Below are positions 1-64,000 of a stretch of DNA of 64,000 bases, piece by piece (position 1 is the stretch's first letter; every line of letters begins with the position of its first letter). This DNA is from Ophelia neglecta (Eukaryota): the NCBI GenBank assembly GCA_965285935.1, contig OZ260661.1, positions 128,588,001-128,652,000 on the forward strand, in the 5' to 3' direction. Below the pieces are notes generated by a model. It saw only the letters and a program-made list of their open reading frames with translations, made no database searches and had not been told where the DNA came from. Both the position numbers and the translations under genes were made by a program.

Positions 1-66
1 ACGTTCACATCACGGAAGATAAATATGATCAATCACGCACCAAGATTTTACTCCAAAATTGTTAAG

Positions 67-265
67 TGCACCTTATTTTCGGGTTTTTTTTCGAGTCTCC
101 CGATGACTAGGAGAGGCGAGAATAAAATGGCGCGAAAATTAAAAGCACCATTAGCACTGTATTGCCGCCGGTGAGTAACCGTGAACATAACAAGCCGTAA
201 AAACTAATTTAAATGTCAGCTGTTCCTGAAAATTTGATGGCGCGAACATTTCCCGTTTTACAGTA
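67..265. mobile_element. Possible degenerate non-autonomous DNA transposon (MITE) relic, right end TTTTACAG|TA
   Basis: Internal repeats ATGGCGCGAA at 127-136 and 237-246 and the terminus TTTCCCGTTTTACAGTA resemble TA-flanked CGCGAAA-repeat MITEs of marine invertebrates. A matching left TIR is not clearly present. Confidence 0.3.
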
Positions 266-867
266 ACTCCCCCTTATAATAAATGTGTATTATATACAAT
301 TAGAACAGTCATGGGTTCCTGTCCCGTCAGGACTCGGTATTTCCTTTTTTGAACATTTTAGGTATGCTATTGAATAAGTATTTTAGTATTGATCAATGTT
401 CTTTACACTAATCTCTTCATATAAGGATAAATTTGACATACCTGTATTGTAGGCCCATATGGTTGTGGCCAGTGGACGACCAACCCTGGGTGACTTTCAA
501 AACCTTGTATCGCGGTCAACCGACAACGCCTGGGATGAAAATGGTTTCCAAGAAAATATTGTTAGGCCTATGTCAGAAATTGTTTGAACTTAATTAAGAT
601 AAACGAAGTCCCTGGAACCCGCCAGTCAGATTCCTCCGACGGCCATTAATTTACATCGATCGCGTTGGCCGCCTGTATAACTCACCTATATTAATATCGA
701 GGACAGCCGGAGGGTCACAGAGCTGTTCAGGTCTCCGCTCATGTCACATTTGATGGCCATTCACGTGCCAGACAACTCCATCTAGTCGGCAGGGAGACCA
801 TGGCGATCACGAGGGTGAGATCAGTTTCAATCTCACTCACTGCCCCATCCGTACACCGCCCGCCTAG

Positions 868-1103
868 ATTGTTATAATCCGATTATATCAACCATAACAA
901 TGCACTGATATCAATCTAATTACCCGGGTAAATAAAAGTAAACATACCCGGAGGCCTGGCGGGGCGTGTAAGCAGATTATAGGTCTCAGCCGACAGACTG
1001 AGTAGGCCAGGGTGACAAGGACTCTACGCAGACGGGTTGGCAGACAGAGGGAAAATGTCGTCTGCCGACTTGATGGATTCTCTACAAAACCAGTCGGAGT
1101 CTG
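868..1103 (+). promoter_or_regulatory. Candidate proximal cis-regulatory module/promoter of the Nodal-like gene (repeated in every unit)
   Basis: Inverted Sox motifs ATTGTT (868-873) and AACAAT (896-901) flank TAATCCGATTA (875-885). Forkhead motifs GTAAATA (928-934) and GTAAACA (938-944), GC box GGCGGGGC (~958-965), and five CAGAC/GTCTG Smad boxes (994-1103) follow. The TSS was not determined. Confidence 0.55.
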
Positions 1104-1154
1104 GAGGAAGGCATCATTTCTCCTCTAGGAACCACCACCAGAACATCAGGCAAT

Positions 1155-2883
1155 ATGAAGAATCTCGTGTTTATCAGCGCCTGGACGGGACTCTTGTCTC
1201 TAACCCTGGTGGCCTTCTCGGCCGGGGCCAAGGGAACACGACCCAAACTGCCAGATCTACTCTTAAGAAACTTCAACAACCTAGGCGATGTGAGCGCTGT
1301 GTCAGCTGACGTCACTGCCCAGCAGAACCAGCCCGATAAAAGCCGAGTTAAGCCGAGCTCGGCCGATGTCAATATGAAGGAGATTGGCGAGATTCTCCAA
1401 AACAAGTACGGGCTGACTAACACGATGGCCAGCGAGGGCTCGACCAGCTTCATGTTGGAGGTGTACCGTAAGCTGGAGGAGGGAGAGAGCTTATCGAGGG
1501 CCTCCGGACATCGTGGGCTAGACGTGGCCATCTTACAGGCAGACACCGTCCGCAGCTTCCACAATAAAGGTAAGGCCTCGTATACCCACACCGCTTTATG
1601 AAAGGAATTCCACAAAAAATCATGTTAAAATGTGAATTTATTAAGCAAGAGATAAAATCGGTAATTAATATTACTTATCATGATAGTAAATAATAATATG
1701 TACATGAAGGTACACGGACTACACACACAATCAATCTGAATTTGGAGACATCAAGAGTATTAACTTAATCCTAATTAATAGCGTTAACATTCACAAAAGC
1801 TGATAAAACTAACAAACAATTATAACAAATTTAGTCGATTAACCGTCTTAATTGCATCCTTATATCAGCTTACTTTATTTTATTCATTGTAAAAATTATT
1901 TATTTTTCCTTGTAGAGCGTATAAGAGAGGAGGGAGACAAGATGGAGATGACCTTCAAACTAGCCGGTATACCTGAGGAGGAGGTAACAAAGAGAGCTGA
2001 ACTACGGGTCCACTCACAGAGAGCACGAGGACGCCGTGTCTTCAAGGTGAAGGTCACAGTAATTGAGGGTGGCGTCCAGATTCAGCGTTTATCCTATCGG
2101 GTCAGCTCCAAGCGTTCTGCCAATGACGGCTCGGCGGTGATTGACCTGACGGCCATCGTTCAGGACGTGTTAGAGGCCGGATACCGCGACGCTACTCTCC
2201 ATTTTACTCTCCGTCCTGCTCATAAACACAGACGGCAGAGAGGGACTGGCCAACAGGAAAAACAGCAGGGCAAAAGTGAGAAGAAGGACAAAACTCAATC
2301 GGGGGACCATAGCGGTAGTGGCGCTGTAGGTAGTGGGCACACCGGAAGACGCTCTAAACGTAATGTCCGTCAGCCGACAACTGGTGCCATGCTTGTAATC
2401 TTCACTCAAAACAAACAGTTTTTCTCTAAACTGACTGCTGACCTTCGCATAAAGGCCAATCAGCTGGACAGCAACTTACCAGACTCAAGAGAACAATCAG
2501 ATGTACGGTCAGGGAGAGTCAAGCGCAGGTCTTCTAAATCAAAAGAAAGATCTAACCCTTTCAAAGTTGGCGGAAAGTGTAGAAAACTGGACTTTACCAT
2601 AGACTTTGAGGTGATTGGCTGGGACAAATGGATTGTTTACCCTAAGAAGTTCAACGCCTATCGCTGTGGCGGAAAGTGTAAGAATATAATGGATCCTGAC
2701 GTGTGGCCCACCAACCACGCCATACTACAGAGTCTAATGAATAGGCGTGACCGGAAGTTAGCCCCGCGTCCATGCTGTGTGCCCACCAAACTACGACCAA
2801 TCAGCATGCTGTATTTCGAGGAGGATGAAATCGTCATACGTAATCACGTGAACATGGCCGTTGACCAATGCGGCTGTAGTTAA
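1155..2883 (+). CDS. nodal: Nodal-like TGF-beta family preproprotein, copy 1 (join 1155..1569,1916..2883; 460 aa)
   Basis: Hydrophobic signal peptide MKNLVFISAWTGLLSLTLVAFSAG and prodomain motifs FMLEVY and ADTVRSF. Donor AAG|GTAAGG at 1569/1570 and acceptor TTTTTCCTTGTAG| at 1915 are both phase 1 and join in frame (G+AG=Glu). Furin site RVKR at 2515-2526. The 7-Cys cystine knot has Nodal-type IGWDKWIVYPKKFNAYRC, PTNHA, CCVPTKLRPISMLY and a Nodal-length finger 2. Confidence 0.88.
1570..1915 (+). other. Phase-1 GT-AG spliceosomal intron (346 bp in copy 1, 342 bp in the others); present in all 13 units
   Basis: GTAAGG donor, AT-rich body, polypyrimidine tract plus TGTAG acceptor; splicing restores one continuous frame. 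Confidence 0.93.
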
Positions 2884-3039
2884 TTACGCCTCACTGGGAG
2901 TCAAAATCCATGACGTACGATGAACACAAATGAGTAACATAAAGCATGGTGTGAATACGTCATATCTTGTAATATATTCAACTTTACCCCCGATCTTGGT
3001 GCTTATTACCTGCTCAGAGAATGCAACAAGTTACCGCTA

Positions 3040-3178
3040 AATAAATAGGCCTATTGCCACTGTGAGCTGGGTAGGTGCTTATACTCACAGATGAAAAGTA
3101 TTTGTCTTGAAAAACACAGTTTATTATTGTTGAAGAATCTATTCATATGTGTTAATATTGTATGTTAATGGGAATAAA
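3040..3178 (+). terminator. Candidate polyadenylation signals of the Nodal-like mRNA (repeated in every unit)
   Basis: AATAAA at 3040-3045 and 3173-3178 in AU-rich sequence 160-290 nt after the stop codon; TGTA upstream of the second. Confidence 0.5.
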
Positions 3179-3414
3179 TGATTTAATGATACTATGAGAA
3201 TCGTTGAAAAATTATTTGCTTATATCAACTTATTATTCCACCGTTAGATCTTAGGGCGTACAAAGTTATTGACAAACTGGTAGACACCTCATAGATATGA
3301 TAGGGTCATAAAATAACGTAACACGTTTCAGATAGATCCTATGGTCTATCTAAGCTTCATGGCCGCTCGGAAAGATTAAATAACAGGTGTAACACGGTGA
3401 AGGTGTCGGTCAGT

Positions 3415-4107: not shown

Positions 4108-4206
4108 CGACACTGCATCGAATAATTGCTATTTAGTTCACTGCAACCAGTAATAACAGCCATGCGTTCTTGCCTAAGTATCACAGCATGCACCGCGGTA
4201 TTTCGT

Positions 4207-4225: not shown

Positions 4226-6163
4226 CCTTCAAAAAAGGCTCGCGCATACGCGCAATTGTACACAAGAATGCCAATTTTGTCAATAAACATACTTCCGCAG
4301 AATTTCATCTCCGCTCCGAAACTATATTCCCGTTCTTAATCAAATGATGCAAGTAAATTTAGTATAAGCTGCGGGCCTGTTCCGACGGCAGGTCTCAGTT
4401 TGGCGGCCTCGTAGTCACAGGCACCCCCCCCCATCCCCCAGCGGTGTATTTCATATAATTTGGATGTGGTGGTCCTAGCAGGGTTTGAATCCTGGGAAAA
4501 TATGACAGAAATTCTACAAAAAGCATCAATGATTTAGGAAATCTTCACAAACCTATATTTTTGATCAAAACCAAATCCTCAATACACTATACCATTTTGA
4601 CGGTCGATCTTCCAAAAGCCTATCTTTAATAGGAAAAAGTCCTACTCTTTTGCGATGGGAAAGGTGCGTCCGGGGTTTCCCGCCTATTCAATGCAAACCA
4701 CAGCTTTTGTATGCCGGTAGCTAGGTTTTAGAAGACCTCACTGGTCAATATGCCTATAGAAGAATAAACTGGACCATTTTCATAGGCTTGCATAGGAGAT
4801 TACCCCTTTTCTAGTACCATAGCGGAGAGATAGGCATTGATAGGGAAAAAAAGCATTCTCTATACCACGGAGCCATATACTATGTTTTCATAGCAACTGA
4901 AATCACGGAAAATATGTGATTAATGACGAATCATAAGTTATCAATAAAATGAAACCAATGTCAGTGTAATCATCCCAAGTCCACCATGAATCGCGAACAA
5001 TAACTTTTCACGTTCACATCACGGAAGATAAATATGATCAATCACGCACCAAGATTTTACTCCAAAATTGTTAAGTGCACCTTATTTTCGGGTTTTTTTT
5101 CGAGTCTCCCGATGACTAGGAGAGGCGAGAATAAAATGGCGCGAAAATTAAAAGCACCATTAGCACTGTATTGCCGCCGGTGAGTAACCGTGAACATAAC
5201 AAGCCGTAAAAACTAATTTAAATGTCAGCTGTTCCTGAAAATTTGATGGCGCGAACATTTCCCGTTTTACAGTAACTCCCCCTTATAATAAATGTGTATT
5301 ATATACAATTAGAACAGTCATGGGTTCCTGTCCCGTCAGGACTCGGTATTTCCTTTTTTGAACATTTTAGGTATGCTATTGAATAAGTATTTTAGTATTG
5401 ATCAATGTTCTTTACACTAATCTCTTCATATAAGGATAAATTTGACATACCTGTATTGTAGGCCCATATGGTTGTGGCCAGTGGACGACCAACCCTGGGT
5501 GACTTTCAAAACCTTGTATCGCGGTCAACCGACAACGCCTGGGATGAAAATGGTTTCCAAGAAAATATTGTTAGGCCTATGTCAGAAATTGTTTGAACTT
5601 AATTAAGATAAACGAAGTCCCTGGAACCCGCCAGTCAGATTCCTCCGACGGCCATTAATTTACATCGATCGCGTTGGCCGCCTGTATAACTCACCTATAT
5701 TAATATCGAGGACAGCCGGAGGGTCACAGAGCTGTTCAGGTCTCCGCTCATGTCACATTTGATGGCCATTCACGTGCCAGACAACTCCATCTAGTCGGCA
5801 GGGAGACCATGGCGATCACGAGGGTGAGATCAGTTTCAATCTCACTCACTGCCCCATCCGTACACCGCCCGCCTAGATTGTTATAATCCGATTATATCAA
5901 CCATAACAATGCACTGATATCAATCTAATTACCCGGGTAAATAAAAGTAAACATACCCGGAGGCCTGGCGGGGCGTGTAAGCAGATTATAGGTCTCAGCC
6001 GACAGACTGAGTAGGCCAGGGTGACAAGGACTCTACGCAGACGGGTTGGCAGACAGAGGGAAAATGTCGTCTGCCGACTTGATGGATTCTCTACAAAACC
6101 AGTCGGAGTCTGGAGGAAGGCATCATTTCTCCTCTAGGAACCACCACCAGAACATCAGGCAAT

Positions 6164-7888
6164 ATGAAGAATCTCGTGTTTATCAGCGTCTGGACGGGAC
6201 TCTTGTCTCTAACCCTGGTGGCCTACTCGGCCGGGGCCAAGGGAACACGACCCAAACTGCCAGATCTACTCTTAAGGAACTTCAACAACCTAGGCGATGT
6301 GAGCGCTGTGTCAGCTGACGTCACTGCCCAGCAGAACCAGCCCGATAATAGCCGAGTTAAGCCGAGCTCGGCCGATGTCAATATGAAGGAGATTGGCGAG
6401 ATTCTCCAAAACAAGTACGGGCTGACTAACACGATGGCCAGCGAGGGCTCGACCAGCTTCATGTTGGAGGTGTACCGTAAGCTGGAGGAGGGAGAGAGCT
6501 TATCGAGGGCCTCCGGACATCGTGGGCTAGACGTGGCCATCTTACAGGCAGACACCGTCCGCAGCTTCCACAATAAAGGTAAGGCCTCGTATACCCACAC
6601 CGCTTTATGAAAGGAATTCCACAAAAAATCATGTTAAAATGTGAATTTATTAGGCAAGAGATAAAATCGGTAATTAATATTACTTATCATGATAGTAAAT
6701 AATAATATGTACATGAAGGTACACGGACTACACAGTCAATCTGAATTTGGAGACATCAAGAGTATTAACTTAATCCTAATTAATAGCGTTAACATTCACA
6801 AAAGCTGATAAAACTAACAAACAATTATAACAAATTTAGTCGATTAACCGTCTTAATTGCATCCTTATATCAGCTTACTTTATTTTATTCATTGTAAAAA
6901 TTATTTATTTTTCCTTGTAGAGCGTATAAGAGAGGAGGGAGACAAGATGGAGATGACCTTCAAACTAGCCGGTATACCTGAGGAGGAGGTAACAAAGAGA
7001 GCTGAACTACGGGTCCACTCACAGAGAGCACGAGGACGCCGTGTCTTCAAGGTGAAGGTCACAGTAATTGAGGGTGGCGTCCAGATTCAGCGTTTGTCCT
7101 ATCGGATCAGCTCCAAGCGTTCTGCCAATGACGGCTCGGCGGTGATTGACCTGACGGCCATCGTTCAGGACGTGTTAGAGGCCGGATACCGCGACGCTAC
7201 TCTCCATTTTACTCTCCGTCCTGCTCATAAACACAGACGGCAGAGAGGGACTGGCCAACAGGAAAAACAGCAGGGCAAAAGTGAGAAGAAGGACAAAACT
7301 CAATCGGGGGACCATAGCGGTAGTGGCGCTGTAGGTAGTGGGCACACCGGAAGACGCTCTAAACGTAATGTCCGTCAGCCGACAACTGGTGCCATGCTTG
7401 TAATCTTCACTCAAAACAAACAGTTTTTCTCTAAACTGACTGCTGACCTTCGCATAAAGGCCAATCAGCTGGACAGCAACTTACCAGACTCAAGAGAACA
7501 ATCAGATGTACGGTCAGGGAGAGTCAAGCGCAGGTCTTCTAAATCAAAAGAAAGATCTAACCCTTTCAAAGTTGGCGGAAAGTGTAGAAAACTGGACTTT
7601 ACCATAGACTTTGAGGTGATTGGCTGGGACAAATGGATTGTTTACCCTAAGAAGTTCAACGCCTATCGCTGCGGCGGAAAGTGTAAGAATATAATGGATC
7701 CTGACGTGTGGCCCACCAACCACGCCATACTACAGAGTCTAATGAATAGGCGTGACCGGAAGTTAGCCCCGCGTCCATGCTGTGTGCCCACCAAACTACG
7801 ACCAATCAGCATGCTGTATTTCGAGGAGGATGAAATCGTCATACGTAATCACGTGAACATGGCCGTTGACCAATGCGGCTGTAGTTAA
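6164..7888 (+). CDS. nodal: Nodal-like preproprotein, copy 2 (join 6164..6578,6921..7888)
   Basis: Same structure and splice sites as copy 1; intact ORF; N/I haplotype (DNS, YRISS). Confidence 0.88.
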
Positions 7889-10800
7889 TTACGCCTCACT
7901 GGGAGTCAAAATCCATGACGTACGATGAACACAAATGAGTAACATAAAGCATGGTGTGAATACGTCATATCTTGTAATATATTCAACTTTACCCCCGATC
8001 TTGGTGCTTATTACCTGCTCAGAGAATGCAACAAGTTACCGCTAAATAAATAGGCCTATTGCCACTGTGAGCTGGGTAGGTGCTTATACTCACAGATGAA
8101 AAGTATTTGTCTTGAAAAACACAGTTTATTATTGTTGAAGAATCTATTCATATGTGTTAATATTGTATGTTAATGGGAATAAATGATTTAATGATACTAT
8201 GAGAATCGTTGAAAAATTATTTGCTTATATCAACTTATTATTCCACCGTTAGATCTTAGGGCGTACAAAGTTATTGACAAACTGGTAGACGACTCATAGA
8301 TATGATAGGGTCATAAAATAACGTAACACGTTTCAGATAGATCCTATGGTCTATCTAAGCTTCATGGCCGCTCGGAAAGATTAAATAACAGGTGTAACAC
8401 GGTGAAGGTGTCGGTCACTGGGGGAAATTGGGGAAGGGGGCTGGGGTGGGGATACACGGCCGCGGGGTCAAGACTCCCCCAGTGTCCAGATTTTTTTCCA
8501 TATCAATACTATAAGCCTATAACCGCGATGTTTCCATATACAAAATCGAGGCAAATATATATATAACCAAAACTTACAGCCCCCCTTCCGCCCTCCGTCT
8601 CCCAATGCCAACGATTATTCCATATAAATACCAGAGGGCTAGGCAAACTTACACATTCCAGGTCGATCTTTATCACAGTCGCTCAGTGTGGGCCAAGCTA
8701 GGCGGACATCATATCAGTCACAATTTAACTTGAAAGATATTTTTGAACGCGGCTACGAAACACAAGGTTGGCGTTACATATGCTTAATTTTCACATGACG
8801 GGACCAAACCAGCATACCCTCTAGAGGCTCTTGAACAAAAGTGGCCATTTTTTATTTTTTGTCACACGTGAGAGCTAGACCGCACATATGACCCCATAGA
8901 TATCCATATGTGTCTTTCACAATCACACAATTTCAAAACAATACCATCCCGTGTCCAAAATCTTTTACTATTCATATCTATATTTTACTATTAACATATA
9001 ATCCAGGTAATCCAGATATGTTTGCTGCCTTTTTTGGTGAATCACAGTCGAGTTTGGCGAATTTATTATTGCCCTGTGAGCTCTGGAACACCTATCAGCT
9101 CTGGAACACCTACGACACTGCATCGAATAATTGCTATTTAGTTCACTGCAACCAGTAATAACAGCCAGGCGTTCTTGCCTAAGTATAACAGCATGCACCG
9201 CGGTATTTCGTTTCCCGCCAGATGGCGATACCTTCAAAAAAGGCTCGCGCATACGCGCAATTGTACACAAGAATGCCAATTTTGTCAATAAACATACTTC
9301 CGCAGAATTTCATCTCCGCTCCGAAACTATATTCCCGTTCTTAATCAAATGATGCAAGTAAATTGAGTATAAGCTGCGGGCCTGTTCCGACGGCAGGTCT
9401 CAGTTTGGCGGCCTCGTAGTCACAGGCACCCCCCCCCCCCCATCCCCCAGCGGTGTATTTCATATAATTTGGATGTGGTGGTCCTAGCAGGGTTTGAATC
9501 CTGGGAAAATATGACAGAAATTCTTCAAAAAGCATCAATGATTTAGGAAATCTTCACAAACCTATATTTTTGATCAAAACCAAATCCTCAATACACTATA
9601 CCATTTTGACGGTCGATCGTCCAAAAACCTATCTTTAATAGGAAAAAGTCCTACTCTTTTGCGATGGGAAAGGTGCGTCCGGGGTTTCCCGCCTATTCAA
9701 TGCAAACCACAGCTTTTGTATGCCGGTAGCTAGGTTTTAGAAGACCTCACTGGTCAATATGCCTATAGAAGAATAAACTGGACCATTTTCATAGGCTTGC
9801 ATAGGAGATTACCCCTTTTCTAGTACCATAGCGGAGAGATAGGCATTGATAGGGAAAAAAAGCATTCTCTATACCGCGGAGCCATATACTATGTTTTCAT
9901 AGCAACTGAAATCACGGAAAATATGTGATTAATGACGAATCATAAGTTATCAATAAAATGAAACCAATGTCAGTGTAATCATCCCAAGTCCACCATGAAT
10001 CGCGAACAATAACTTTTCACGTTCACATCACGGAAGATAAATATGATCAATCACGCACCAAGATTTTACTCCAAAATTGTTAAGTGCACCTTATTTTCGG
10101 GTTTTTTTTCGAGTCTCCCGATGACTAGGAGAGGCGAGAATAAAATGGCGCGAAAATTAAAAGCACCATTAGCACTGTATTGCCGCCGGTGAGTAACCGT
10201 GAACATAACAAGCCGTAAAAACTAATTTAAATGTCAGCTGTTCCTGAAAATTTGATGGCGCGAACATTTCCCGTTTTACAGTAACTCCCCCTTATAATAA
10301 ATGTGTATTATATACAATTAGAACAGTCATGGGTTCCTGTCCCGTCAGGACTCGGTATTTCCTTTTTTGAACATTTTAGGTATGCTATTGAATAAGTATT
10401 TTAGTATTGATCAATGTTCTTTACACTAATCTCTTCATATAAGGATAAATTTGACATACCTGTATTGTAGGCCCATATGGTTGTGGCCAGTGGACGACCA
10501 ACCCTGGGTGACTTTCAAAACCTTGTATCGCGGTCAACCGACAACGCCTGGGATGAAAATGGTTTCCAAGAAAATATTGTTAGGCCTATGTCAGAAATTG
10601 TTTGAACTTAATTAAGATAAACGAAGTCCCTGGAACCCGCCAGTCAGATTCCTCCGACGGCCATTAATTTACATCGATCGCGTTGGCCGCCTGTATAACT
10701 CACCTATATTAATATCGAGGACAGCCGGAGGGTCACAGAGCTGTTCAGGTCTCCGCTCATGTCACATTTGATGGCCATTCACGTGCCAGACAACTCCATC

Positions 10801-11172: not shown

Positions 11173-12897
11173 ATGAAGAATCTCGTGTTTATCAGCGTCT
11201 GGACGGGACTCTTGTCTCTAACCCTGGTGGCCTACTCGGCCGGGGCCAAGGGAACACGACCCAAACTGCCAGATCTACTCTTAAGGAACTTCAACAACCT
11301 AGGCGATGTGAGCGCTGTGTCAGCTGACGTCACTGCCCAGCAGAACCAGCCCGATAAAAGCCGAGTTAAGCCGAGCTCGGCCGATGTCAATATGAAGGAG
11401 ATTGGCGAGATTCTCCAAAACAAGTACGGGCTGACTAACACGATGGCCAGCGAGGGCTCGACCAGCTTCATGTTGGAGGTGTACCGTAAGCTGGAGGAGG
11501 GAGAGAGCTTATCGAGGGCCTCCGGACATCGTGGGCTAGACGTGGCCATCTTACAGGCAGACACCGTCCGCAGCTTCCACAATAAAGGTAAGGCCTCGTA
11601 TACCCACACCGCTTTATGAAAGGAATTCCACAAAAAATCATGTTAAAATGTGAATTTATTAGGCAAGAGATAAAATCGGTAATTAATATTACTTATCATG
11701 ATAGTAAATAATAATATGTACATGAAGGTACACGGACTACACAATCAATCTGAATTTGGAGACATCAAGAGTATTAACTTAATCCTAATTAATAGCGTTA
11801 ACATTCACAAAAGCTGATAAAACTAACAAACAATTATAACAAATTTAGTCGATTAACCGTCTTAATTGCATCCTTATATCAGCTTACTTTATTTTATTCA
11901 TTGTAAAAATTATTTATTTTTCCTTGTAGAGCGTATAAGAGAGGAGGGAGACAAGATGGAGATGACCTTCAAACTAGCCGGTATACCTGAGGAGGAGGTA
12001 ACAAAGAGAGCTGAACTACGGGTCCACTCACAGAGAGCACGAGGACGCCGTGTCTTCAAGGTGAAGGTCACAGTAATTGAGGGTGGCGTCCAGATTCAGC
12101 GTTTGTCCTATCGGGTCAGCTCCAAGCGTTCTGCCAATGACGGCTCGGCGGTGATTGACCTGACGGCCATCGTTCAGGACGTGTTAGAGGCCGGATACCG
12201 CGACGCTACTCTCCATTTTACTCTCCGTCCTGCTCATAAACACAGACGGCAGAGAGGGACTGGCCAACAGGAAAAACAGCAGGGCAAAAGTGAGAAGAAG
12301 GACAAAACTCAATCGGGGGACCATAGCGGTAGTGGCGCTGTAGGTAGTGGGCACATCGGAAGACGCTCTAAACGTAATGTCCGTCAGCCGACAACTGGTG
12401 CCATGCTTGTAATCTTCACTCAAAACAAACAGTTTTTCTCTAAACTGACTGCTGACCTTCGCATAAAGGCCAATCAGCTGGACAGCAACTTACCAGACTC
12501 AAGAGAACAATCAGATGTACGGTCAGGGAGAGTCAAGCGCAGGTCTTCTAAATCAAAAGAAAGATCTAACCCTTTCAAAGTTGGCGGAAAGTGTAGAAAA
12601 CTGGACTTTACCATAGACTTTGAGGTGATTGGCTGGGACAAATGGATTGTTTACCCTAAGAAGTTCAACGCCTATCGCTGCGGCGGAAAGTGTAAGAATA
12701 TAATGGATCCTGACGTGTGGCCCACCAACCACGCCATACTACAGAGTCTAATGAATAGGCGTGACCGGAAGTTAGCCCCGCGTCCATGCTGTGTGCCCAC
12801 CAAACTACGACCAATCAGCATGCTGTATTTCGAGGAGGATGAAATCGTCATACGTAATCACGTGAACATGGCCGTTGACCAATGCGGCTGTAGTTAA
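11173..12897 (+). CDS. nodal: Nodal-like preproprotein, copy 3 (join 11173..11587,11930..12897)
   Basis: Intact; K/V haplotype; private T>I (GHIGRR). Confidence 0.88.
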
Positions 12898-30900: not shown

Positions 30901-31201
30901 CACCGCCCGCCTAGATTGTTATAATCCGATTATATCAACCATAACAATGCACTGATATCAATCTAATTACCCGGGTAAATAAAAGTAAACATACCCGGAG
31001 GCCTGGCGGGGCGTGTAAGCAGATTATAGGTCTCAGCCGACAGACTGAGTAGGCCAGGGTGACAAGGACTCTAGGCAGACGGGTTGGCAGACAGAGGGAA
31101 AATGTCGTCTGCCGACTTGATGGATTCTCTACAAAACCAGTCGGAGTCTGGAGGAAGGCATCATTTCTCCTCTAGGAACCACCACCAGAACATCAGGCAA
31201 T

Positions 31202-46200: not shown

Positions 46201-47925
46201 ATGAAGAATCTCGTGTTTATCAGCGTCTGGACGGGACTCTTGTCTCTAACCCTGGTGGCCTACTCGGCCGGGGCCAAGGGAACACGACCCAAACTGCCAG
46301 ATCTACTCTTAAGGAACTTCAACAACCTAGGCGATGTGAGCGCTGTGTCAGCTGACGTCACTGCCCAGCAGAACCAGCCCGATAAAAGCCGAGTTAAGCC
46401 GAGCTCGGCCGATGTCAATATGAAGGAGATTGGCGAGATTCTCCAAAACAAGTACGGGCTGACTAACACGATGGCCAGCGAGGGCTCGACCAGCTTCATG
46501 TTGGAGGTGTACCGTAAGCTGGAGGAGGGAGAGAGCTTATCGAGGGCCTCCGGACATCGTGGGCTAGACGTGGCCATCTTACAGGCAGACACCGTCCGCA
46601 GCTTCCACAATAAAGGTAAGGCCTCGTATACCCACACCGCTTTATGAAAGGAATTCCACAAAAAATCATGTTAAAATGTGAATTTATTAGGCAAGAGATA
46701 AAATCGGTAATTAATATTACTTATCATGATAGTAAATAATAATATGTACATGAAGGTACACGGACTACACAATCAATCTGAATTTGGAGACATCAAGAGT
46801 ATTAACTTAATCCTAATTAATAGCGTTAACATTCACAAAAGCTGATAAAACTAACAAACAATTATAACAAATTTAGTCGATTAACCGTCTTAATTGCATC
46901 CTTATATCAGCTTACTTTATTTTATTCATTGTAAAAATTATTTATTTTTCCTTGTAGAGCGTATAAGAGAGGAGGGAGACAAGATGGAGATGACCTTCAA
47001 ACTAGCCGGTATACCTGAGGAGGAGGTAACAAAGAGAGCTGAACTACGGGTCCACTCACAGAGAGCACGAGGACGCCGTGTCTTCAAGGTGAAGGTCACA
47101 GTAATTGAGGGTGGCGTCCAGATTCAGCGTTTGTCCTATCGGGTCAGCTCCAAGCGTTCTGCCAATGACGGCTCGGCGGTGATTGACCTGACGGCCATCG
47201 TTCAGGACGTGTTAGAGGCCGGATACCGCGACGCTACTCTCCATTTTACTCTCCGTCCTGCTCATAAACACAGACGGCAGAGAGGGACTGGCCAACAGGA
47301 AAAACAGCAGGGCAAAAGTGAGAAGAAGGACAAAACTCAATCGGGGGACCATAGCGGTAGTGGCGCTGTAGGTAGTGGGCACACCGGAAGACGCTCTAAA
47401 CGTAATGTCCGTCAGCCGACAACTGGTGCCATGCTTGTAATCTTCACTCAAAACAAACAGTTTTTCTCTAAACTGACTGCTGACCTTCGCATAAAGGCCA
47501 ATCAGCTGGACAGCAACTTACCAGACTCAAGAGAACAATCAGATGTACGGTCAGGGAGAGTCAAGCGCAGGTCTTCTAAATCAAAAGAAAGATCTAACCC
47601 TTTCAAAGTTGGCGGAAAGTGTAGAAAACTGGACTTTACCATAGACTTTGAGGTGATTGGCTGGGACAAATGGATTGTTTACCCTAAGAAGTTCAACGCC
47701 TATCGCTGCGGCGGAAAGTGTAAGAATATAATGGATCCTGACGTGTGGCCCACCAACCACGCCATACTACAGAGTCTAATGAATAGGCGTGACCGGAAGT
47801 TAGCCCCGCGTCCATGCTGTGTGCCCACCAAACTACGACCAATCAGCATGCTGTATTTCGAGGAGGATGAAATCGTCATACGTAATCACGTGAACATGGC
47901 CGTTGACCAATGCGGCTGTAGTTAA
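46201..47925 (+). CDS. nodal: Nodal-like preproprotein, copy 10 (join 46201..46615,46958..47925)
   Basis: Intact; K/V consensus protein. Confidence 0.88.
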
Positions 47926-51211: not shown

Positions 51212-52936
51212 ATGAAGAATCTCGTGTTTATCAGCGTCTGGACGGGACTCTTGTCTCTAACCCTGGTGGCCTACTCGGCCGGGGCCAAGGGAACACGACC
51301 CAAACTGCCAGATCTACTCTTAAGGAACTTCAACAACCTAGGCGATGTGAGCGCTGTGTCAGCTGACGTCACTGCCCAGCAGAACCAGCCCGATAAAAGC
51401 CGAGTTAAGCCGAGCTCGGCCGATGTCAATATGAAGGAGATTGGCGAGATTCTCCAAAACAAGTACGGGCTGACTAACACGATGGCCAGCGAGGGCTCGA
51501 CCAGCTTCATGTTGGAGGTGTACCGTAAGCTGGAGGAGGGAGAGAGCTTATCGAGGGCCTCCGGACATCGTGGGCTAGACGTGGCCATCTTACAGGCAGA
51601 CACCGTCCGCAGCTTCCACAATAAAGGTAAGGCCTCGTATACCCACATCGCTTTATGAAAGGAATTCCACAAAAAATCATGTTAAAATGTGAATTTATTA
51701 AGCAAGAGATAAAATCGGTAATTAATATTACTTATCATGATAGTAAATAATAATATGTACATGAAGGTACACGGACTACACAATCAATCTGAATTTGGAG
51801 ACATCAAGAGTATTAACTTAATCCTAATTAATAGCGTTAACATTCACAAAAGCTGATAAAACTAACAAACAATTATAACAAATTTAGTCGATTAACCGTC
51901 TTAATTGCATCCTTATATCAGCTTACTTTATTTTATTCATTGTAAAAATTATTTATTTTTCCTTGTAGAGCGTATAAGAGAGGAGGGAGACAAGATGGAG
52001 ATGACCTTCAAACTAGCCGGTATACCTGAGGAGGAGGTAACAAAGAGAGCTGAACTACGGGTCCACTCACAGAGAGCACGAGGACGCCGTGTCTTCAAGG
52101 TGAAGGTCACAGTAATTGAGGGTGGCGTCCAGATTCAGCGTTTGTCCTATCGGGTCAGCTCCAAGCGTTCTGCCAATGACGGCTCGGCGGTGATTGACCT
52201 GACGGCCATCGTTCAGGACGTGTTAGAGGCCGGATACCGCGACGCTACTCTCCATTTTACTCTCCGTCCTGCTCATAAACACAGACGGCAGAGAGGGACT
52301 GGCCAACAGGAAAAACGGCAGGGCAAAAGTGAGAAGAAGGACAAAACTCAATCGGGGGACCATAGCGGTAGTGGCGCTGTAGGTAGTGGGCACACCGGAA
52401 GACGCTCTAAACGTAATGTCCGTCAGCCGACAACTGGTGCCATGCTTGTAATCTTCACTCAAAACAAACAATTTTTCTCTAAACTGACTGCTGACCTTCG
52501 CATAAAGGCCAATCAGCTGGACAGCAACTTACCAGACTCAAGAGAACAATCAGATGTACGGTCAGGGAGAGTCAAGCGCAGGTCTTCTAAATCAAAAGAA
52601 AGATCTAACCCTTTCAAAGTTGGCGGAAAGTGTAGAAAACTGGACTTTACCATAGACTTTGAGGTGATTGGCTGGGACAAATGGATTGTTTACCCTAAGA
52701 AGTTCAACGCCTATCGCTGCGGCGGAAAGTGTAAGAATATAATGGATCCTGACGTGTGGCCCACCAACCACGCCATACTACAGAGTCTAATGAATAGGCG
52801 TGACCGGAAGTTAGCCCCGCGTCCATGCTGTGTGCCCACCAAACTACGACCAATCAGCATGCTGTATTTCGAGGAGGATGAAATCGTCATACGTAATCAC
52901 GTGAACATGGCCGTTGACCAATGCGGCTGTAGTTAA
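51212..52936 (+). CDS. nodal: Nodal-like preproprotein, copy 11 (join 51212..51626,51969..52936)
   Basis: Intact; Q>R (EKRQG) shared with copy 12. Confidence 0.88.
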
Positions 52937-56218: not shown

Positions 56219-57943
56219 ATGAAGAATCTCGTGTTTATCAGCGTCTGGACGGGACTCTTGTCTCTAACCCTGGTGGCCTACTCGGCCGGGGCCAAGGGAA
56301 CACGACCCAAACTGCCAGATCTACTCTTAAGGAACTTCAACAACCTAGGCGATGTGAGCGCTGTGTCAGCTGACGTCACTGCCCAGCAGAACCAGCCCGA
56401 TAAAAGCCGAGTTAAGCCGAGCTCGGCCGATGTCAATATGAAGGAGATTGGCGAGATTCTCCAAAACAAGTACGGGCTGACTAACACGATGGCCAGCGAG
56501 GGCTCGACCAGCTTCATGTTGGAGGTGTACCGTAAGCTGGAGGAGGGAGAGAGCTTATCGAGGGCCTCCGGACATCGTGGGCTAGACGTGGCCATCTTAC
56601 AGGCAGACACCGTCCGCAGCTTCCACAATAAAGGTAAGGCCTCGTATACCCACATCGCTTTATGAAAGGAATTCCACAAAAAATCATGTTAAAATGTGAA
56701 TTTATTAAGCAAGAGATAAAATCGGTAATTAATATTACTTATCATGATAGTAAATAATAATATGTACATGAAGGTACACGGACTACACAATCAATCTGAA
56801 TTTGGAGACATCAAGAGTATTAACTTAATCCTAATTAATAGCGTTAACATTCACAAAAGCTGATAAAACTAACAAACAATTATAACAAATTTAGTCGATT
56901 AACCGTCTTAATTGCATCCTTATATCAGCTTACTTTATTTTATTCATTGTAAAAATTATTTATTTTTCCTTGTAGAGCGTATAAGAGAGGAGGGAGACAA
57001 GATGGAGATGACCTTCAAACTAGCCGGTATACCTGAGGAGGAGGTAACAAAGAGAGCTGAACTACGGGTCCACTCACAGAGAGCACGAGGACGCCGTGTC
57101 TTCAAGGTGAAGGTCACAGTAATTGAGGGTGGCGTCCAGATTCAGCGTTTGTCCTATCGGGTCAGCTCCAAGCGTTCTGCCAATGACGGCTCGGCGGTGA
57201 TTGACCTGACGGCCATCGTTCAGGACGTGTTAGAGGCCGGATACCGCGACGCTACTCTCCATTTTACTCTCCGTCCTGCTCATAAACACAGACGGCAGAG
57301 AGGGACTGGCCAACAGGAAAAACGGCAGGGCAAAAGTGAGAAGAAGGACAAAACTCAATCGGGGGACCATAGCGGTAGTGGCGCTGTAGGTAGTGGGTAC
57401 ACCGGAAGACGCTCTAAACGTAATGTCCGTCAGCCGACAACTGGTGCCATGCTTGTAATCTTCACTCAAAACAAACAATTTTTCTCTAAACTGACTGCTG
57501 ACCTTCGCATAAAGGCCAATCAGCTGGACAGCAACTTACCAGACTCAAGAGAACAATCAGATGTACGGTCAGGGAGAGTCAAGCGCAGGTCTTCTAAATC
57601 AAAAGAAAGATCTAACCCTTTCAAAGTTGGCGGAAAGTGTAGAAAACTGGACTTTACCATAGACTTTGAGGTGATTGGCTGGGACAAATGGATTGTTTAC
57701 CCTAAGAAGTTCAACGCCTATCGCTGCGGCGGAAAGTGTAAGAATATAATGGATCCTGACGTGTGGCCCACCAACCACGCCATACTACAGAGTCTAATGA
57801 ATAGGCGTGACCGGAAGTTAGCCCCGCGTCCATGCTGTGTGCCCACCAAACTACGACCAATCAGCATGCTGTATTTCGAGGAGGATGAAATCGTCATACG
57901 TAATCACGTGAACATGGCCGTTGACCAATGCGGCTGTAGTTAA
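56219..57943 (+). CDS. nodal: Nodal-like preproprotein, copy 12 (join 56219..56633,56976..57943)
   Basis: Intact; Q>R shared with copy 11; private H>Y (SGYTG). Confidence 0.88.
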
Positions 57944-60900: not shown

Positions 60901-61224
60901 TCTCACTCACTGCCCCATCCGTACACCGCCCGCCTAGATTGTTATAATCCGATTATATCAACCATAACAATGCACTAATATCAATCCAATTACCCGGGTA
61001 AATAAAAGTAAACATACCCGGAGGCCTGGCGGGGCGTGTAAGCAGATTATAGGTCTCAGCCGACAGACTGAGTAGGCCAGGGTGACAAGGACTCTAGGCA
61101 GACGGGTTGGCAGACAGAGGGAAAATGTCGTCTGCCGACTTGATGGATTCTCTACAAAACCAGTCGGAGTCTGGAGGAAGGCATCATTTCTCCTCTAGGA
61201 ACCACCACCAGAACATCAGGCAAT

Positions 61225-62949
61225 ATGAAGAATCTCGTGTTTATCAGCGTCTGGACGGGACTCTTGTCTCTAACCCTGGTGGCCTACTCGGCCGGGGCCA
61301 AGGGAACACGACCCAAACTGCCAGATCTACTCTTAAGGAACTTCAACAACCTAGGCGATGTGAGCGCTGTGTCAGCTGACGTCACTGCCCAGCAGAACCA
61401 GCCCGATAAAAGCCGAGTTAAGCCGAGCTCGGCCGATGTCAATATGAAGGAGATTGGCGAGATTCTCCAAAACAAGTACGGGCTGACTAACACGATGGCC
61501 AGCGAGGGCTCGACCAGCTTCATGTTGGAGGTGTACCGTAAGCTGGAGGAGGGAGAGAGCTTATCGAGGGCCTCCGGACATCGTGGGCTAGACGTGGCCA
61601 TCTTACAGGCAGACACCGTCCGCAGCTTCCACAATAAAGGTAAGGCCTCGTATACCCACACCGCTTTATGAAAGGAATTCCACAAAAAATCATGTTAAAA
61701 TGTGAATTTATTAGGCAAGAGATAAAATCGGTAATTAATATTACTTATCATGATAGTAAATAATAATATGTACATGAAGGTACACGGACTACACAATCAA
61801 TCTGAATTTGGAGACATCAAGAGTATTAACTTAATCCTAATTAATAGCGTTAACATTCACAAAAGCTGATAAAACTAACAAACAATTATAACAAATTTAG
61901 TCGATTAACCGTCTTAATTGCATCCTTATATCAGCTTACCTTATTTTATTCATTGTAAAAATTATTTATTTTTCCTTGTAGAGCGTATAAGAGAGGAGGG
62001 AGACAAGATGGAGATGACCTTCAAACTAGCCGGTATACCTGAGGACGAGGTAACAAAGAGAGCTGAACTACGGGTCCACTCACAGAGAGCACGAGGACGC
62101 CGTGTCTTCAAGGTGAAGGTCACAGTAATTGAGGGTGGCGTCCAGATTCAGCGTTTGTCCTATCGGGTCAGCTCCAAGCGTTCTGCCAATGACGGCTCGG
62201 CGGTGATTGACCTGACGGCCATCGTTCAGGACGTGTTAGAGGCCGGATACCGCGACGCTACTCTCCATTTTACTCTCCGTCCTGCTCATAAACACAGACG
62301 GCAGAGAGGGACTGGCCAACAGGAAAAACAGCAGGGCAAAAGTGAGAAGAAGGACAAAACTCAATCGGGGGACCATAGCGGTAGTGGCGCTGTAGGTAGT
62401 GGGCACACCGGAAGACGCTCTAAACGTAATGTCCGTCAGCCGACAACTGGTGCCATGCTTGTAATCTTCACTCAAAACAAACAGTTTTTCTCTAAACTGA
62501 CTGCTGACCTTCGCATAAAGGCCAATCAGCTGGACAGCAACTTACCAGACTCAAGAGAACAATCAGATGTACGGTCAGGGAGAGTCAAGCGCAGGTCTTC
62601 TAAATCAAAAGAAAGATCTAACCCTTTCAAAGTTGGCGGAAAGTGTAGAAAACTGGACTTTACCATAGACTTTGAGGTGATTGGCTGGGACAAATGGATT
62701 GTTTACCCTAAGAAGTTCAACGCCTATCGCTGCGGCGGAAAGTGTAAGAATATAATGGATCCTGACGTGTGGCCCACCAACCACGCCATACTACAGAGTC
62801 TAATGAATAGGCGTGACCGGAAGTTAGCCCCGCGTCCATGCTGTGTGCCCACCAAACTACGACCAATCAGCATGCTGTATTTCGAGGAGGATGAAATCGT
62901 CATACGTAATCACGTGAACATGGCCGTTGACCAATGCGGCTGTAGTTAA
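61225..62949 (+). CDS. nodal: Nodal-like preproprotein, copy 13 (join 61225..61639,61982..62949)
   Basis: Intact; private E>D (PEDEV). Confidence 0.88.
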
Positions 62950-64000
62950 TTACGCCTCACTGGGAGTCAAAATCCATGACGTACGATGAACACAAATGAG
63001 TAACATAAAGCATGGTGTGAATACGTCATATCTTGTAATATATTCAACTTTACCCCCGATCTTGGTGCTTATTACCTGCTCAGAGAATGCAACAAGTTAC
63101 CGCTAAATAAATAGGCCTATTGCCACTGTGAGCTGGGTAGGTGCTTATACTCACAGATGAAAAGTATTTGTCTTGAAAAACACAGTTTATTATTGTTGAA
63201 GAATCTATTCATATGTGTTAATATTGTATGTTAATGGGAATAAATGATTTAATGATACTATGAGAATCGTTGAAAAATTATTTGCTTATATCAACTTATT
63301 ATTCCACCGTTAGATCTTAGGGCGTACAAAGTTATTGACAAACTGGTAGACACCTCATAGATATGATAGGGTCATAAAATAACGTAACACGTTTCAGATA
63401 GATCCTATGGTCTATCTAAGCTTCATGGCCGCTCGGAAAGATTAAATAACAGGTGTAACACGGTGAAGGTGTCGGTCACTGGGGGAAATTGGGGAAGGGG
63501 GCTGGGGTGGGGATACACGGCCGCGGGGTCAAGACTCCCCCAGTGTCCAGATTTTTTTGCATATCAATACTATAAGCCTATAACCGCGATGTTTCCATAT
63601 ACAAAATCGAGGCAAATATATATATAACCAAAACTTACAGCCCCCCTTCCGCCCTCCGTCTCCCAATGCCAACGATTATTCCATATAAATTCCAGAGGGC
63701 TAGGCAAACTTACACATTCCAGGTCGATCTTTATCACAGTCGCTCAGTGTGGGCCAAGCTAGGCGGACATCATATCAGTCACAATTTAACTTGAAAGATA
63801 TTTTGGAACGCGGCTACGAAACACAAGGTTGGCGTTACATATGCTTAATTTTCACATGACGGGACCAAACCAGCATGCCCTCTAGAGGCTCTTGAACAAA
63901 AGTGGCCATTTTTTATTTTTTGTCACACGTGAGAGCTAGACCGCACATATGACCCCATAGATATCCATATGTGTCTTTCACAATCACACAATTTCAAAAC

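What the first reader, a model, noticed from the sequence alone, without database searches (positions are those of the whole stretch)
1..64000. A macrosatellite-like tandem array of at least 13 intact Nodal-like morphogen genes
Seen: 13 complete genes, all in the same orientation at ~5.0 kb period, each with intact ORF and splice sites plus its own upstream and downstream sequence. The array continues past both window ends. Known: Nodal is a dosage-sensitive TGF-beta ligand for mesendoderm induction and left-right asymmetry, and is usually present as one or a few copies. The best-known tandem amplification is Xenopus nodal5/nodal3, where nodal5 is among the earliest zygotic transcripts. Inference: the two-exon structure and spacer content point to an invertebrate, so this would be an independent rDNA/histone-like amplification of a morphogen. 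It could supply a rapid burst of ligand in cleavage-stage embryos or drive an unusual asymmetry programme.
Basis: partly seen in the sequence, partly recalled or inferred. Interest (0 to 1): 0.95.

Follow-up and report, generated by a model that had tools for sequence, protein, structure and literature searches.

The report
Tandem array of ~30 Nodal genes
An invertebrate (spiralian, probably annelid-type) genome holds about 30 nearly identical, intact copies of a Nodal-family embryonic signalling gene in one 157-kb array, besides an ordinary single-copy nodal; amplification of this dosage-sensitive signal on this scale was known only from frogs, and whether the copies are expressed could not be tested.

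Summary
The window is 12.8 head-to-tail units of about 5,006 bp, 99.4-99.96% identical. It contains 13 two-exon genes (459-460 codons), each with an intact start codon, GT/AG intron, reading frame and stop.

The whole array spans 157.5 kb on contig C1: 29 full-length genes, 27 intact. In three DNA runs of one sample, k-mer depth of array contigs is 23-30 times that of the adjoining flank. It is therefore not assembly inflation.

Two maximum-likelihood trees place the mature domain in the Nodal clade (100/98 and 99/97) with vertebrate, hemichordate, sea-urchin and spiralian Nodals. BMP2/4-, BMP3-, BMP5-8-, GDF6- and activin-like ligands fall outside it.

A second, single-copy nodal lies on contig C8, and the arrayed gene is its lineage-specific paralogue.

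The copies look constrained. One mature ligand is shared by 24 of 27 intact copies. Only 1 of 306 mature-domain sites varies, and edge copies give dN/dS of 0.20-0.25. Diverged edge copies beside a uniform core indicate concerted evolution.

A relative has the orthologue as a single copy, so the amplification is lineage-specific.

No RNA data exist. The "rapid burst of ligand" idea remains inference.

The parts
1155..2883 (+). Nodal-like gene copy 1: exon 1 1155-1569, intron 1570-1915, exon 2 1916-2883 (stop included)
   Evidence: ATG, GT/AG, open frames, TAA; 460 codons
6164..7888 (+). Copy 2 (reference copy): exon 1 6164-6578, intron 6579-6920 (phase 1, split codon G|AG), exon 2 6921-7888
   Evidence: Pfam TGF_beta on exon 2 (run on the equivalent exon of copy 1)
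11173..12897 (+). Copy 3: exon 1 11173-11587, exon 2 11930-12897
16180..17904 (+). Copy 4: exon 1 16180-16594, exon 2 16937-17904
21186..22910 (+). Copy 5: exon 1 21186-21600, exon 2 21943-22910
26193..27917 (+). Copy 6: exon 1 26193-26607, exon 2 26950-27917
31202..32923 (+). Copy 7: exon 1 31202-31616, exon 2 31959-32923. It has an in-frame 3-bp deletion (459 codons) and lies in the short 4,985-bp unit
   Evidence: the same 965-nt exon 2 occurs in three copies of the inverted block
36187..37911 (+). Copy 8: exon 1 36187-36601, exon 2 36944-37911
41195..42919 (+). Copy 9: exon 1 41195-41609, exon 2 41952-42919
46201..47925 (+). Copy 10: exon 1 46201-46615, exon 2 46958-47925
51212..52936 (+). 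Copy 11: exon 1 51212-51626, exon 2 51969-52936
56219..57943 (+). Copy 12: exon 1 56219-56633, exon 2 56976-57943
61225..62949 (+). Copy 13: exon 1 61225-61639, exon 2 61982-62949
7580..7885 (+). Mature cystine-knot ligand domain of the reference copy (seven Cys). An RVKR furin-type site lies just upstream, and the predicted mature ligand is about 111 aa
   Evidence: the mature ligand is identical in all 13 window copies
6164..6250 (+). Hydrophobic N-terminus (probable signal peptide) of the reference copy
   Evidence: read from the translation; no signal-peptide predictor was run
5006..10014 (+). One full repeat unit as used for the comparisons. The natural unit border (where the end copies stop) is about 50 bp after the stop codon, near window 7938
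8040..8185 (+). Two AATAAA poly(A)-signal candidates, about 160 and 290 bp after the stop codon
   Evidence: read from the sequence; not verified with RNA
7889..10014 (.). Intergenic spacer, continuing at 5006-6163 upstream of the next gene. It has no Rfam family, tRNA, internal repeat or Pfam-bearing ORF. Its distal part is the most variable stretch of the unit

Best explanation
Shown:
- This is a real tandem array evolving in concert, about 30 units of 5.0 kb over 157 kb.
- Each unit holds a complete short gene with two exons and a 342-bp intron. It encodes a secreted TGF-beta pro-protein whose mature domain belongs to the Nodal clade.
- The arrayed gene is a lineage-specific paralogue of a conventional single-copy nodal on another chromosome-scale contig (C8). 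Both share the same intron position.
- The coding sequence, and above all the mature ligand, is under purifying selection. The core units are kept uniform while the edge units have drifted to 2-4% divergence.

Inferred:
- Unequal crossing-over and gene conversion amplified and now homogenise the unit.
- The array is kept because many identical short transcription units yield far more ligand mRNA per unit time than one gene could. It would be a dosage or 'burst' locus, as in the amplified nodal5/nodal3 genes of Xenopus or in histone arrays.
- The most likely time of use is the short cell cycles of the early embryo, where annelid Nodal acts in organiser and axis signalling.
- The single-copy C8 gene would keep the finely regulated roles.
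For: Structure and intactness: searches show 13 of 13 window genes and 27 of 29 array genes intact.

Real copy number: k-mer depth of array contigs against flank contigs is 28x, 23x and about 30x in three runs, and a contig bridges the array end.

Nodal identity:
- The Nodal clade is supported at 100/98 and 99/97, the latter with Ptychodera and Diadema Nodal included.
- Against solved structures, the Nodal/BMP2 chimera scores 118 bits and the next hit 97.
- 35 of 36 clade-conserved columns are kept.

Paralogy: the C8 gene matches the chimera at 137 bits, has the same intron position, and is sister to the array-type clade (95/69).

Selection:
- 1 of 306 mature-domain sites varies, against 1.7-2.9% elsewhere in the gene and 5% in the distal spacer.
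- pN/pS in exon 2 is 0.27.
- Edge copies against the core give dS 0.04-0.09 and dN 0.009-0.020, a ratio of 0.20-0.25.
- 24 of 27 intact copies encode one identical mature ligand.

Concerted evolution: core units are 99.4-99.96% identical, edge units 96-98%.

Lineage-specific gain: in a relative the orthologue is single-copy on two haplotype contigs.

Precedents and background: frog nodal amplifications (PMC12344233; PMC6893194). Nodal is expressed in the organiser of annelid embryos and is needed for axis formation in some annelids (PMC13275895; PMC7522025 and PMC7418201 by title and abstract).
Against: - No RNA run holds the sequence, so no copy is shown to be transcribed, spliced or translated. 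Stage and tissue are unknown.
- Exon 1 (signal peptide and N-terminal prodomain) shows pN/pS of about 0.9.
- An out-of-frame upstream ATG at 6064 would start an overlapping uORF if the transcript begins further upstream.
- In a related species a fragment of the orthologous exon 2 has become a 777-bp satellite with many broken copies. This locus type can therefore amplify without any benefit.
- All read evidence comes from one sample, probably the assembled individual.
- The left third of the array has inversions and a gap that I could not verify.
- The trees lacked named ADMP, Univin/Vg1/GDF1, BMP9/10 and Lefty sequences.
Confidence: 0.55

Rival explanations
1. Neutral or selfish macrosatellite. 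The 5-kb unit amplified by unequal exchange for no benefit. The copies look intact only because they are young and continually homogenised. Nodal function rests on the single-copy C8 gene, and the array is silent or irrelevant.
For: A relative carries a satellite made of broken fragments of the orthologous exon. There is no expression evidence. Exon 1 pN/pS is about 0.9. Two of 29 copies are frameshifted, and partial units lie at the inversion joints.
Against: The edge copies have diverged for dS 0.04-0.09 and still show dN/dS of 0.20-0.25. The mature domain has about 7-10 times fewer variable sites than the rest of the unit. 27 of 29 copies keep frame, splice sites and all seven cysteines. 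35 of 36 clade-conserved residues are retained.
Confidence: 0.22
2. A functional but re-purposed ligand. The amplified paralogue is used outside early axis formation, for example in gametogenesis, regeneration, growth or immunity, or as a maternal transcript. High copy number would serve sustained high output rather than an embryonic burst.
For: The paralogue is old and diverged from the C8 nodal: 62-64% identity in the mature domain. It has a longer branch and one change in the otherwise conserved C-P-x-P stretch. In gastropods, two nodal paralogues differ in expression (PMC9907556).
Against: Nothing direct. The conserved Nodal residues and the short, single-intron gene fit either use.
Confidence: 0.17
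3. Assembly artefact: a single gene, or a few copies, inflated into an array by the assembler.
For: The region holds a 100-N gap, inverted blocks and an inverted copy of the left flank. Read support comes from one sample only.
Against: Array contigs have 23-30 times the k-mer depth of the adjoining flank in three runs, matching the roughly 31 unit-equivalents assembled. The units differ by copy-specific SNPs and indels. The inverted flank copy differs from the flank by 3-14%, far more than the roughly 0.6% difference seen between read contigs and assembly in the right flank.
Confidence: 0.03
4. It is not a Nodal but another TGF-beta ligand (BMP, ADMP, Univin/Vg1 or GDF) that merely resembles Nodal.
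For: The trees lacked named ADMP, Univin/Vg1/GDF1 and BMP9/10 sequences. The mature domain gives only 113 alignment columns.
Against: It groups with named vertebrate, hemichordate and sea-urchin Nodals at 99-100% support, apart from BMP2/4 and the BMP3-like, BMP5-8-like, GDF6 and activin/myostatin-like sequences. Nodal proteins dominate the similarity lists. The Nodal chimera is the best solved-structure match by 21 bits.
Confidence: 0.03

Closest known systems
Amplified Nodal2-type genes of frogs (Xenopus nodal5/Xnr5 and nodal3/Xnr3 clusters; 12-24 nodal copies in the spadefoot toad Spea multiplicata)
   Same: A Nodal-family ligand gene multiplied in tandem within one lineage while other lineages keep one or a few copies (PMC12344233, PMC6893194). 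A burst-of-transcription rationale has been proposed there too.
   Different: This is an independent event in a spiralian. The array-type genes form their own subclade among spiralian Nodals. The units here are far more uniform (over 99%) and regularly spaced at 5.0 kb, like a macrosatellite. Early expression is documented in frogs and untested here.
Two nodal paralogues of gastropods (Crepidula nodalA/B, Patella)
   Same: A spiralian lineage-specific duplication of nodal, with one conventional and one divergent paralogue (PMC9907556). Here the two are the C8 gene and the array-type gene.
   Different: Gastropods have two copies. Here one paralogue stands at about 30 copies.
Single Nodal of the annelids studied so far (Owenia, Capitella, Platynereis, Chaetopterus)
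   Same: The same ligand family. The closest named relatives of both genes here are annelid proteins (Paralvinella, Ridgeia) and a protein that JGI names nodal. In those species Nodal acts in the organiser, in dorsoventral patterning or on one body side (PMC13275895).
   Different: Owenia is reported with a single Nodal (PMC13275895). None of the papers I read reports an amplification in any of these species.
Concerted-evolving tandem gene arrays (replication-dependent histone clusters, rDNA) and gene-bearing macrosatellites (D4Z4/DUX4, RS447/USP17). These examples come from my own knowledge, not from a tool
   Same: Kilobase-sized units, each with a complete gene. Very high identity in the core and diverged edge units. 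Copy number in the tens.
   Different: The cargo is a secreted morphogen with an intron and probably a poly(A) signal. No histone-type 3' stem-loop lies in the unit. Copy-number polymorphism, the hallmark of macrosatellites, could not be tested.

Membership tests
TGF-beta superfamily ligand | C-terminal cystine-knot domain (Pfam PF00019) | tested here: met
   E 8.7e-32, 110 bits against a cut-off of 27, profile positions 1-104 of 104.
TGF-beta superfamily ligand | Seven conserved cysteines, including the interchain one (the CC pair) | tested here: met
   all are present in the alignment with Nodal proteins. They are kept in all 27 intact copies.
TGF-beta superfamily ligand | Pre-pro-protein layout: signal peptide, prodomain, and a dibasic furin site before the mature domain | tested here: met
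   a hydrophobic N-terminus in exon 1, a prodomain of about 320 aa, and RVKR before the mature domain. The signal peptide was judged by eye only. Pfam's propeptide model did not match.
Nodal subfamily | Groups with named Nodal proteins, apart from other TGF-beta classes, in a maximum-likelihood tree of the mature domain | tested here: met
   Searches (100/98; 99/97), with vertebrate, Ptychodera and Diadema Nodals. The outgroups were BMP2/4, GDF6, and this genome's own BMP3-like (labelled), BMP5-8-like (labelled by eye) and activin/myostatin-like (by eye) genes.
Nodal subfamily | Separation from ADMP, Univin/Vg1/GDF1, BMP9/10 and Lefty | not tested
   No named sequences of these classes could be obtained. 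The profile search returned only BMP2/4.
Nodal subfamily | Residues conserved across the Nodal clade | tested here: met
   35 of 36 columns that are at least 85% conserved are kept. The one change is Pro to Ile after the third cysteine.
Nodal subfamily | Signals through Activin-type receptors and Smad2/3; embryonic organiser or left-right expression | not testable with these tools
   No RNA runs and no assay.
Concerted-evolving tandem gene array / gene-bearing macrosatellite | Kilobase units head to tail, near-identical core, diverged edge units | tested here: met
Concerted-evolving tandem gene array / gene-bearing macrosatellite | High copy number present in the raw reads, not only in the assembly | tested here: met
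   contig k-mer depth is 23-30 times that of the flank in three runs of one sample. The tool cautions that contig depth is not a copy number.
Concerted-evolving tandem gene array / gene-bearing macrosatellite | Copy number varies between individuals | not testable with these tools
   Only one sample holds the sequence.
Frog nodal5/nodal3-type amplification | Orthology to the anuran Nodal2 expansion | tested here: not met
   the array gene sits in a spiralian subclade with three unnamed relatives, and the anuran genes sit among the vertebrate Nodals. It resembles the frog case in kind but is not a member.
Frog nodal5/nodal3-type amplification | Among the earliest zygotic transcripts | not testable with these tools
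   No RNA data.

The most novel reading that the evidence does not exclude
The array is a spiralian counterpart of the multicopy early-zygotic loci of vertebrates (Xenopus nodal5/6, zebrafish miR-430). About 30 identical short units would fire together in cleavage or blastula stages and flood the embryo with one Nodal ligand. Copy number itself would set the signalling dose for organiser or axis specification. This would be a convergent, dosage-by-amplification solution for a morphogen in a protostome.
Probability: 0.3. Interest if true: 0.85.

Novelty: new variant of a known kind. Interest (0 to 1): 0.62.

Why it matters
Nodal is a textbook dosage-sensitive morphogen. The spiralian and annelid papers I read describe one copy, or at most two. 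Large tandem amplifications are described only in frogs, where they are linked to very early zygotic induction.

A uniform array of about 30 copies under purifying selection in a spiralian would be an independent second case. It would allow a direct test of whether gene amplification is a general way to obtain a fast, strong morphogen pulse in rapidly cleaving embryos.

It would also be a natural system for studying how copy number, concerted evolution and signalling dose interact. A conventional single-copy paralogue in the same genome serves as an internal control. Relatives that hold the orthologue as a single gene, or as a decayed satellite, give the before and after states.

Tried and rejected
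- Tandem Repeats Finder reported nothing because its longest period is 500 bp. The period was instead measured from ORF spacing, offset identity and BLAST.
- A DNA search of the own genome with a whole unit scored only one candidate, so it was useless for mapping. I fetched 210 kb and mapped the units locally.
- A profile search with seven paralogues, meant to bring in all TGF-beta classes, returned only BMP2/4 proteins. Named ADMP, Univin/Vg1 and BMP9/10 references are therefore missing from the trees.
- Expression could not be tested.
- Rfam, the tRNA scan and the repeat scan of one unit all found nothing. Spacer ORFs have no Pfam domain. I saw no sign of a transposon or RNA gene as cargo, and the unit has no histone-type 3' stem-loop.
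- Synteny gave nothing. The Toll-like-receptor and fibrinogen genes next to the orthologue in a relative are absent from the 210 kb around the array and from the 10 kb around the C8 gene.
- I tried to name the organism from mitochondrial COX1. I gave this up because the gene is cut by eight TGA codons, the tools take no read-through, and the pieces are too short for the length window of the protein search.
- I did not search with the spliced (joined) protein. The exons were searched and analysed apart, by reference. Frame continuity across the intron was judged from exon lengths and the split codon only.
- The 100-N stretch at C1:128,564,487-128,564,586 was left as it is.
Full report
**1. Observation**

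The window shows a strict 10-kb beat in base composition. It holds 13 plus-strand ORFs of 342-343 codons, spaced 4,985-5,011 bp apart. Cutting the window at the ORF spacing gives 12 full units and one partial unit that are 99.38-99.96% identical pairwise. Tandem Repeats Finder found nothing only because its period limit is 500 bp.

Each long ORF carries a complete Pfam TGF_beta domain (E 8.7e-32).

In the reference unit an ORF of 148 codons begins with ATG at 6164, about 760 bp upstream of exon 2. It starts with a hydrophobic stretch. It ends at a consensus donor (AAAG|GTAAGG after 6578). A polypyrimidine tract and an AG at 6919-6920 open exon 2 at 6921, and the split codon G|AG keeps the frame.

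All 13 genes in the window have ATG, GT, AG, open frames in both exons and TAA. They have 460 codons, or 459 in the copy with an in-frame 3-bp deletion.

I checked frame continuity from the exon lengths and the split codon.

**2. Extent and architecture**

The window is C1:128,588,001-128,652,000 of a 762-Mb assembly. I fetched 210 kb around it and mapped the units with BLAST. Unit sequence runs from 128,523,533 to 128,681,062, a span of 157.5 kb.

- The right 94 kb is one gap-free head-to-tail block in plus orientation. It has 18 full units plus a truncated, 98.4%-identical end unit, 19 genes in all. The window is part of this block.
- The left 63 kb is a mosaic. It holds minus- and plus-oriented sub-blocks joined tail to tail and head to head inside the spacers, some fragments, a 100-N gap (128,564,487-586, left untouched), and a 10-kb inverted copy of the left flank that differs from it by 3-14%.
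- In all there are 29 full-length genes, 27 of them intact. The two broken ones each have a 1-bp frameshift.
- Three block ends stop at the same unit position, about 50 bp after the stop codon. These are the two outer ends of the array and the sub-block end that abuts the inverted flank copy. The copies there are the most diverged, at 96-98%.

**3. Is it real?**

Three DNA runs of one sample hold about 90% of the unit's sampled words. They are kept as contigs, so depth is one k-mer figure per contig, and the tool warns against reading it as copy number.

I laid them on 6,000 bases spanning the right end of the array.

| Run | Array contig depth | Flank contig depth | Ratio |
|---|---|---|---|
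| X1 | 275.7 | 9.9 | 28x |
| X2 | 680.7 | 30 | 23x |
| X3 | 754-784 | 26.3 | about 30x |

A 478-bp contig of flank-like depth bridges the junction. These ratios match the roughly 31 unit-equivalents assembled.

The read contigs differ from the assembly in the flank by about 0.6%. The inverted flank copy differs from its partner by 3-14%. That copy is therefore more likely an old segmental duplication than a misplaced haplotype.

I regard assembly inflation as very unlikely. The inversion joints, however, remain unverified, and all reads come from what is probably the assembled individual.

**4. What the gene is**

A protein search with exon 2 returned unnamed invertebrate proteins first (46-32% identity). 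Among the named hits were one that JGI calls nodal and proteins of the annelids Paralvinella and Ridgeia. After these came dozens of vertebrate Nodal proteins, with GDF and BMP only further down.

Against solved structures, the best match is the Nodal/BMP2 chimera at 118 bits. The next hit, BMP10, scores 97 bits.

I built two maximum-likelihood trees of the mature domain (LG+C20, 113 columns).

- The first (57 rows) unites the array gene with vertebrate Nodals and the spiralian proteins at 100/98.
- The second (62 rows) adds Ptychodera Nodal and a Diadema nodal homologue. It gives the Nodal clade 99/97.
- Outside the clade fall named BMP2/4 of eight phyla, GDF6, two crustacean BMP-like proteins, and this genome's own BMP2/4-like, BMP3-like (labelled), BMP5-8-like and activin/myostatin-like genes.
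- Named ADMP, Univin/Vg1/GDF1, BMP9/10 and Lefty sequences could not be obtained.

Of 36 alignment columns that are at least 85% conserved in the other Nodal-clade proteins, the array ligand keeps 35. The exception is a Pro-to-Ile change after the third cysteine.

**5. A second nodal, and the relatives**

The genome has one further close relative on contig C8. It is 64% identical in the mature domain and single-copy. Its best solved-structure match is again the Nodal chimera, at 137 bits. Its best named hits are JGI's nodal, Ptychodera Nodal and fish nodal-related 2. Its intron sits at the same place as in the array gene.

In the tree the array gene groups with three unnamed sequences from other assemblies (100/90). 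The C8 gene is sister to that group (95/69). The arrayed gene is therefore an old, lineage-specific paralogue of the conventional nodal.

- In one relative the orthologue has the same two-exon layout. It is single-copy on two haplotype-like contigs, next to a Toll-like-receptor gene and a fibrinogen gene.
- In another relative, part of the orthologous exon 2 has become a 777-bp satellite. Some of its copies are intact and many are frameshifted.
- A more distant relative has a single gene on an 824-kb contig.

The amplification of whole genes is thus specific to this lineage, while the locus type seems prone to tandem amplification.

**6. Constraint and concerted evolution**

Among 25 full units, the share of variable sites differs by region.

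| Region | Variable sites |
|---|---|
| Mature domain | 0.33% (1 of 306) |
| Prodomain part of exon 2 | 1.7% |
| Exon 1 | 2.65% |
| Intron | 2.9% |
| 1.16 kb upstream of the gene | 2.4% |
| Distal spacer | 5.0% |

At the rate seen in the rest of the unit, 7-10 variable sites would be expected in the mature domain.

Among the 27 intact copies, pN/pS is 0.27 in exon 2 and 0.91 in exon 1.

The three diverged edge copies differ from the core consensus in exon 2 by dS 0.037-0.092 and dN 0.009-0.020, a ratio of 0.20-0.25. Their introns differ by 1.5-4.7%.

The 13 window genes encode nine protein versions but a single mature ligand. 24 of the 27 intact copies share that ligand.

Identity barely falls with distance inside the main block, from 99.67% to 99.56%.

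Together these results show two things:

- The array has existed far longer than the diversity of its core suggests, so the core is being homogenised or was recently re-expanded.
- Selection has acted on the protein throughout, most strongly on the secreted ligand.

**7. The rest of the unit**

The 3.3-kb spacer has no Rfam family, tRNA, internal repeat or Pfam-bearing ORF.

Two AATAAA motifs lie about 160 and 290 bp after the stop codon. The primary transcript would then be about 2 kb long.

CpG observed/expected is 0.88 across the unit, so there is no sign of heavy germline methylation.

An out-of-frame ATG at 6064 could start an overlapping uORF if transcription begins upstream of it.

**8. 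How it most likely works**

Shown: this is a real, uniform, selected array of complete Nodal-clade genes, standing beside a conventional nodal.

Inferred: the array multiplies transcriptional output of one ligand. The units are short with a single small intron and are identical in the part that is secreted. That is the design of loci that must deliver much product quickly, such as histone arrays and the amplified nodal5/nodal3 of Xenopus (PMC12344233). The spadefoot-toad genome paper likewise proposed rapid bursts of transcription for its 12-24 nodal copies (PMC6893194).

In annelids, Nodal is expressed in the embryonic organiser at blastula stage in Owenia. Activin/Nodal signalling sets the dorsoventral axis in Capitella and Chaetopterus. 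[quoted passage not shown]

An early embryonic burst is therefore my preferred reading, at about 0.3 for that specific form and 0.55 for 'functional high-dosage Nodal locus' overall.

The rivals are a silent, selfish macrosatellite (0.22) and a re-purposed ligand with a non-embryonic role (0.17). An assembly artefact and a non-Nodal identity are each rated at 0.03.

**9. Novelty**

The literature searches and the papers read show the following:

- tandem nodal expansions in anurans;
- two paralogues at most in the gastropods Crepidula and Patella (PMC9907556);
- a single Nodal in Owenia, and no amplification reported in the other annelids studied (PMC13275895);
- no invertebrate nodal array.

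The search covers open-access papers and preprints only.

I class this as a new variant of a known kind: gene amplification of Nodal, here independent, in a protostome, and in macrosatellite form.

**10. Limits**

- There are no RNA data.
- Only one individual is represented.
- The inversions are unverified.
- The set of outgroup classes in the trees is incomplete.
The closest named proteins are annelid, but part of mitochondrial ND5 lies on the opposite strand to COX1 and ND2, which from my own knowledge is unusual for annelids.

Noticed in passing
L042:1-11905 (ENA ERZ25069271 contig_493): In a related species, the 3' two thirds of the orthologous Nodal-like exon 2 forms a head-to-tail satellite with periods of 777 bp and about 1,553 bp. 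Its 248-codon ORFs lie 30 bp apart, and many copies are frameshifted or truncated. Here a coding fragment of a morphogen gene has turned into satellite DNA.
   Followed up: partly
L024:4439-5023 (+) and L024:5051-5095, i.e. C1:128,684,439-128,685,095, 3.3 kb right of the array end: A lone linker-histone H1 gene (Pfam Linker_histone, E 2.5e-30) followed by a histone 3' stem-loop (Rfam RF00032, 36.7 bits). No core histone ORFs were seen in the 29-kb right flank.
   Followed up: partly
C1:128,523,533-128,587,996 (left of the window; loci L014-L020): The left third of the array consists of inverted sub-blocks joined inside the spacers. It also holds two frameshifted copies, unit fragments, a 100-N gap and a 10-kb inverted copy of the left flank that is 3-14% diverged. 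This is either a real palindromic rearrangement or partly a scaffolding problem.
   Followed up: partly
window 30044-35028 (unit 7): This unit is about 22 bp shorter than the others. Its gene has an in-frame 3-bp deletion, which is also found in three copies of the inverted minus-strand block 40-50 kb away. That suggests exchange between the blocks.
   Followed up: partly
L036:1380-2306 (+), L037:1383-2309 (+), L038:1998-2933 (-) (contigs C5 and C2): Three paralogous TGF-beta ligands have a single Cys where the CC pair should be, so they are six-Cys ligands without the interchain cysteine. They sit on a very long branch. Whether they are Lefty-like is open.
   Followed up: no
protein P0048 (Chamberlinius hualienensis, a millipede): This myriapod protein falls inside the Nodal clade on a long branch. 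From my own knowledge, Nodal is usually described as lost in Ecdysozoa.
   Followed up: no
window 6064-6318 (+), and the same place in the other units: An out-of-frame upstream ATG opens an 84-codon ORF (read from this ATG) that overlaps the main start codon. It would act as a uORF only if transcription starts upstream of it.
   Followed up: no
G000 contig C223 (17,755 bp; L046, L047): This is the mitochondrial contig. COX1 and the ND2 pieces lie on the plus strand, while an ND5 piece lies on the minus strand. COX1 has eight TGA (Trp) codons.
   Followed up: no
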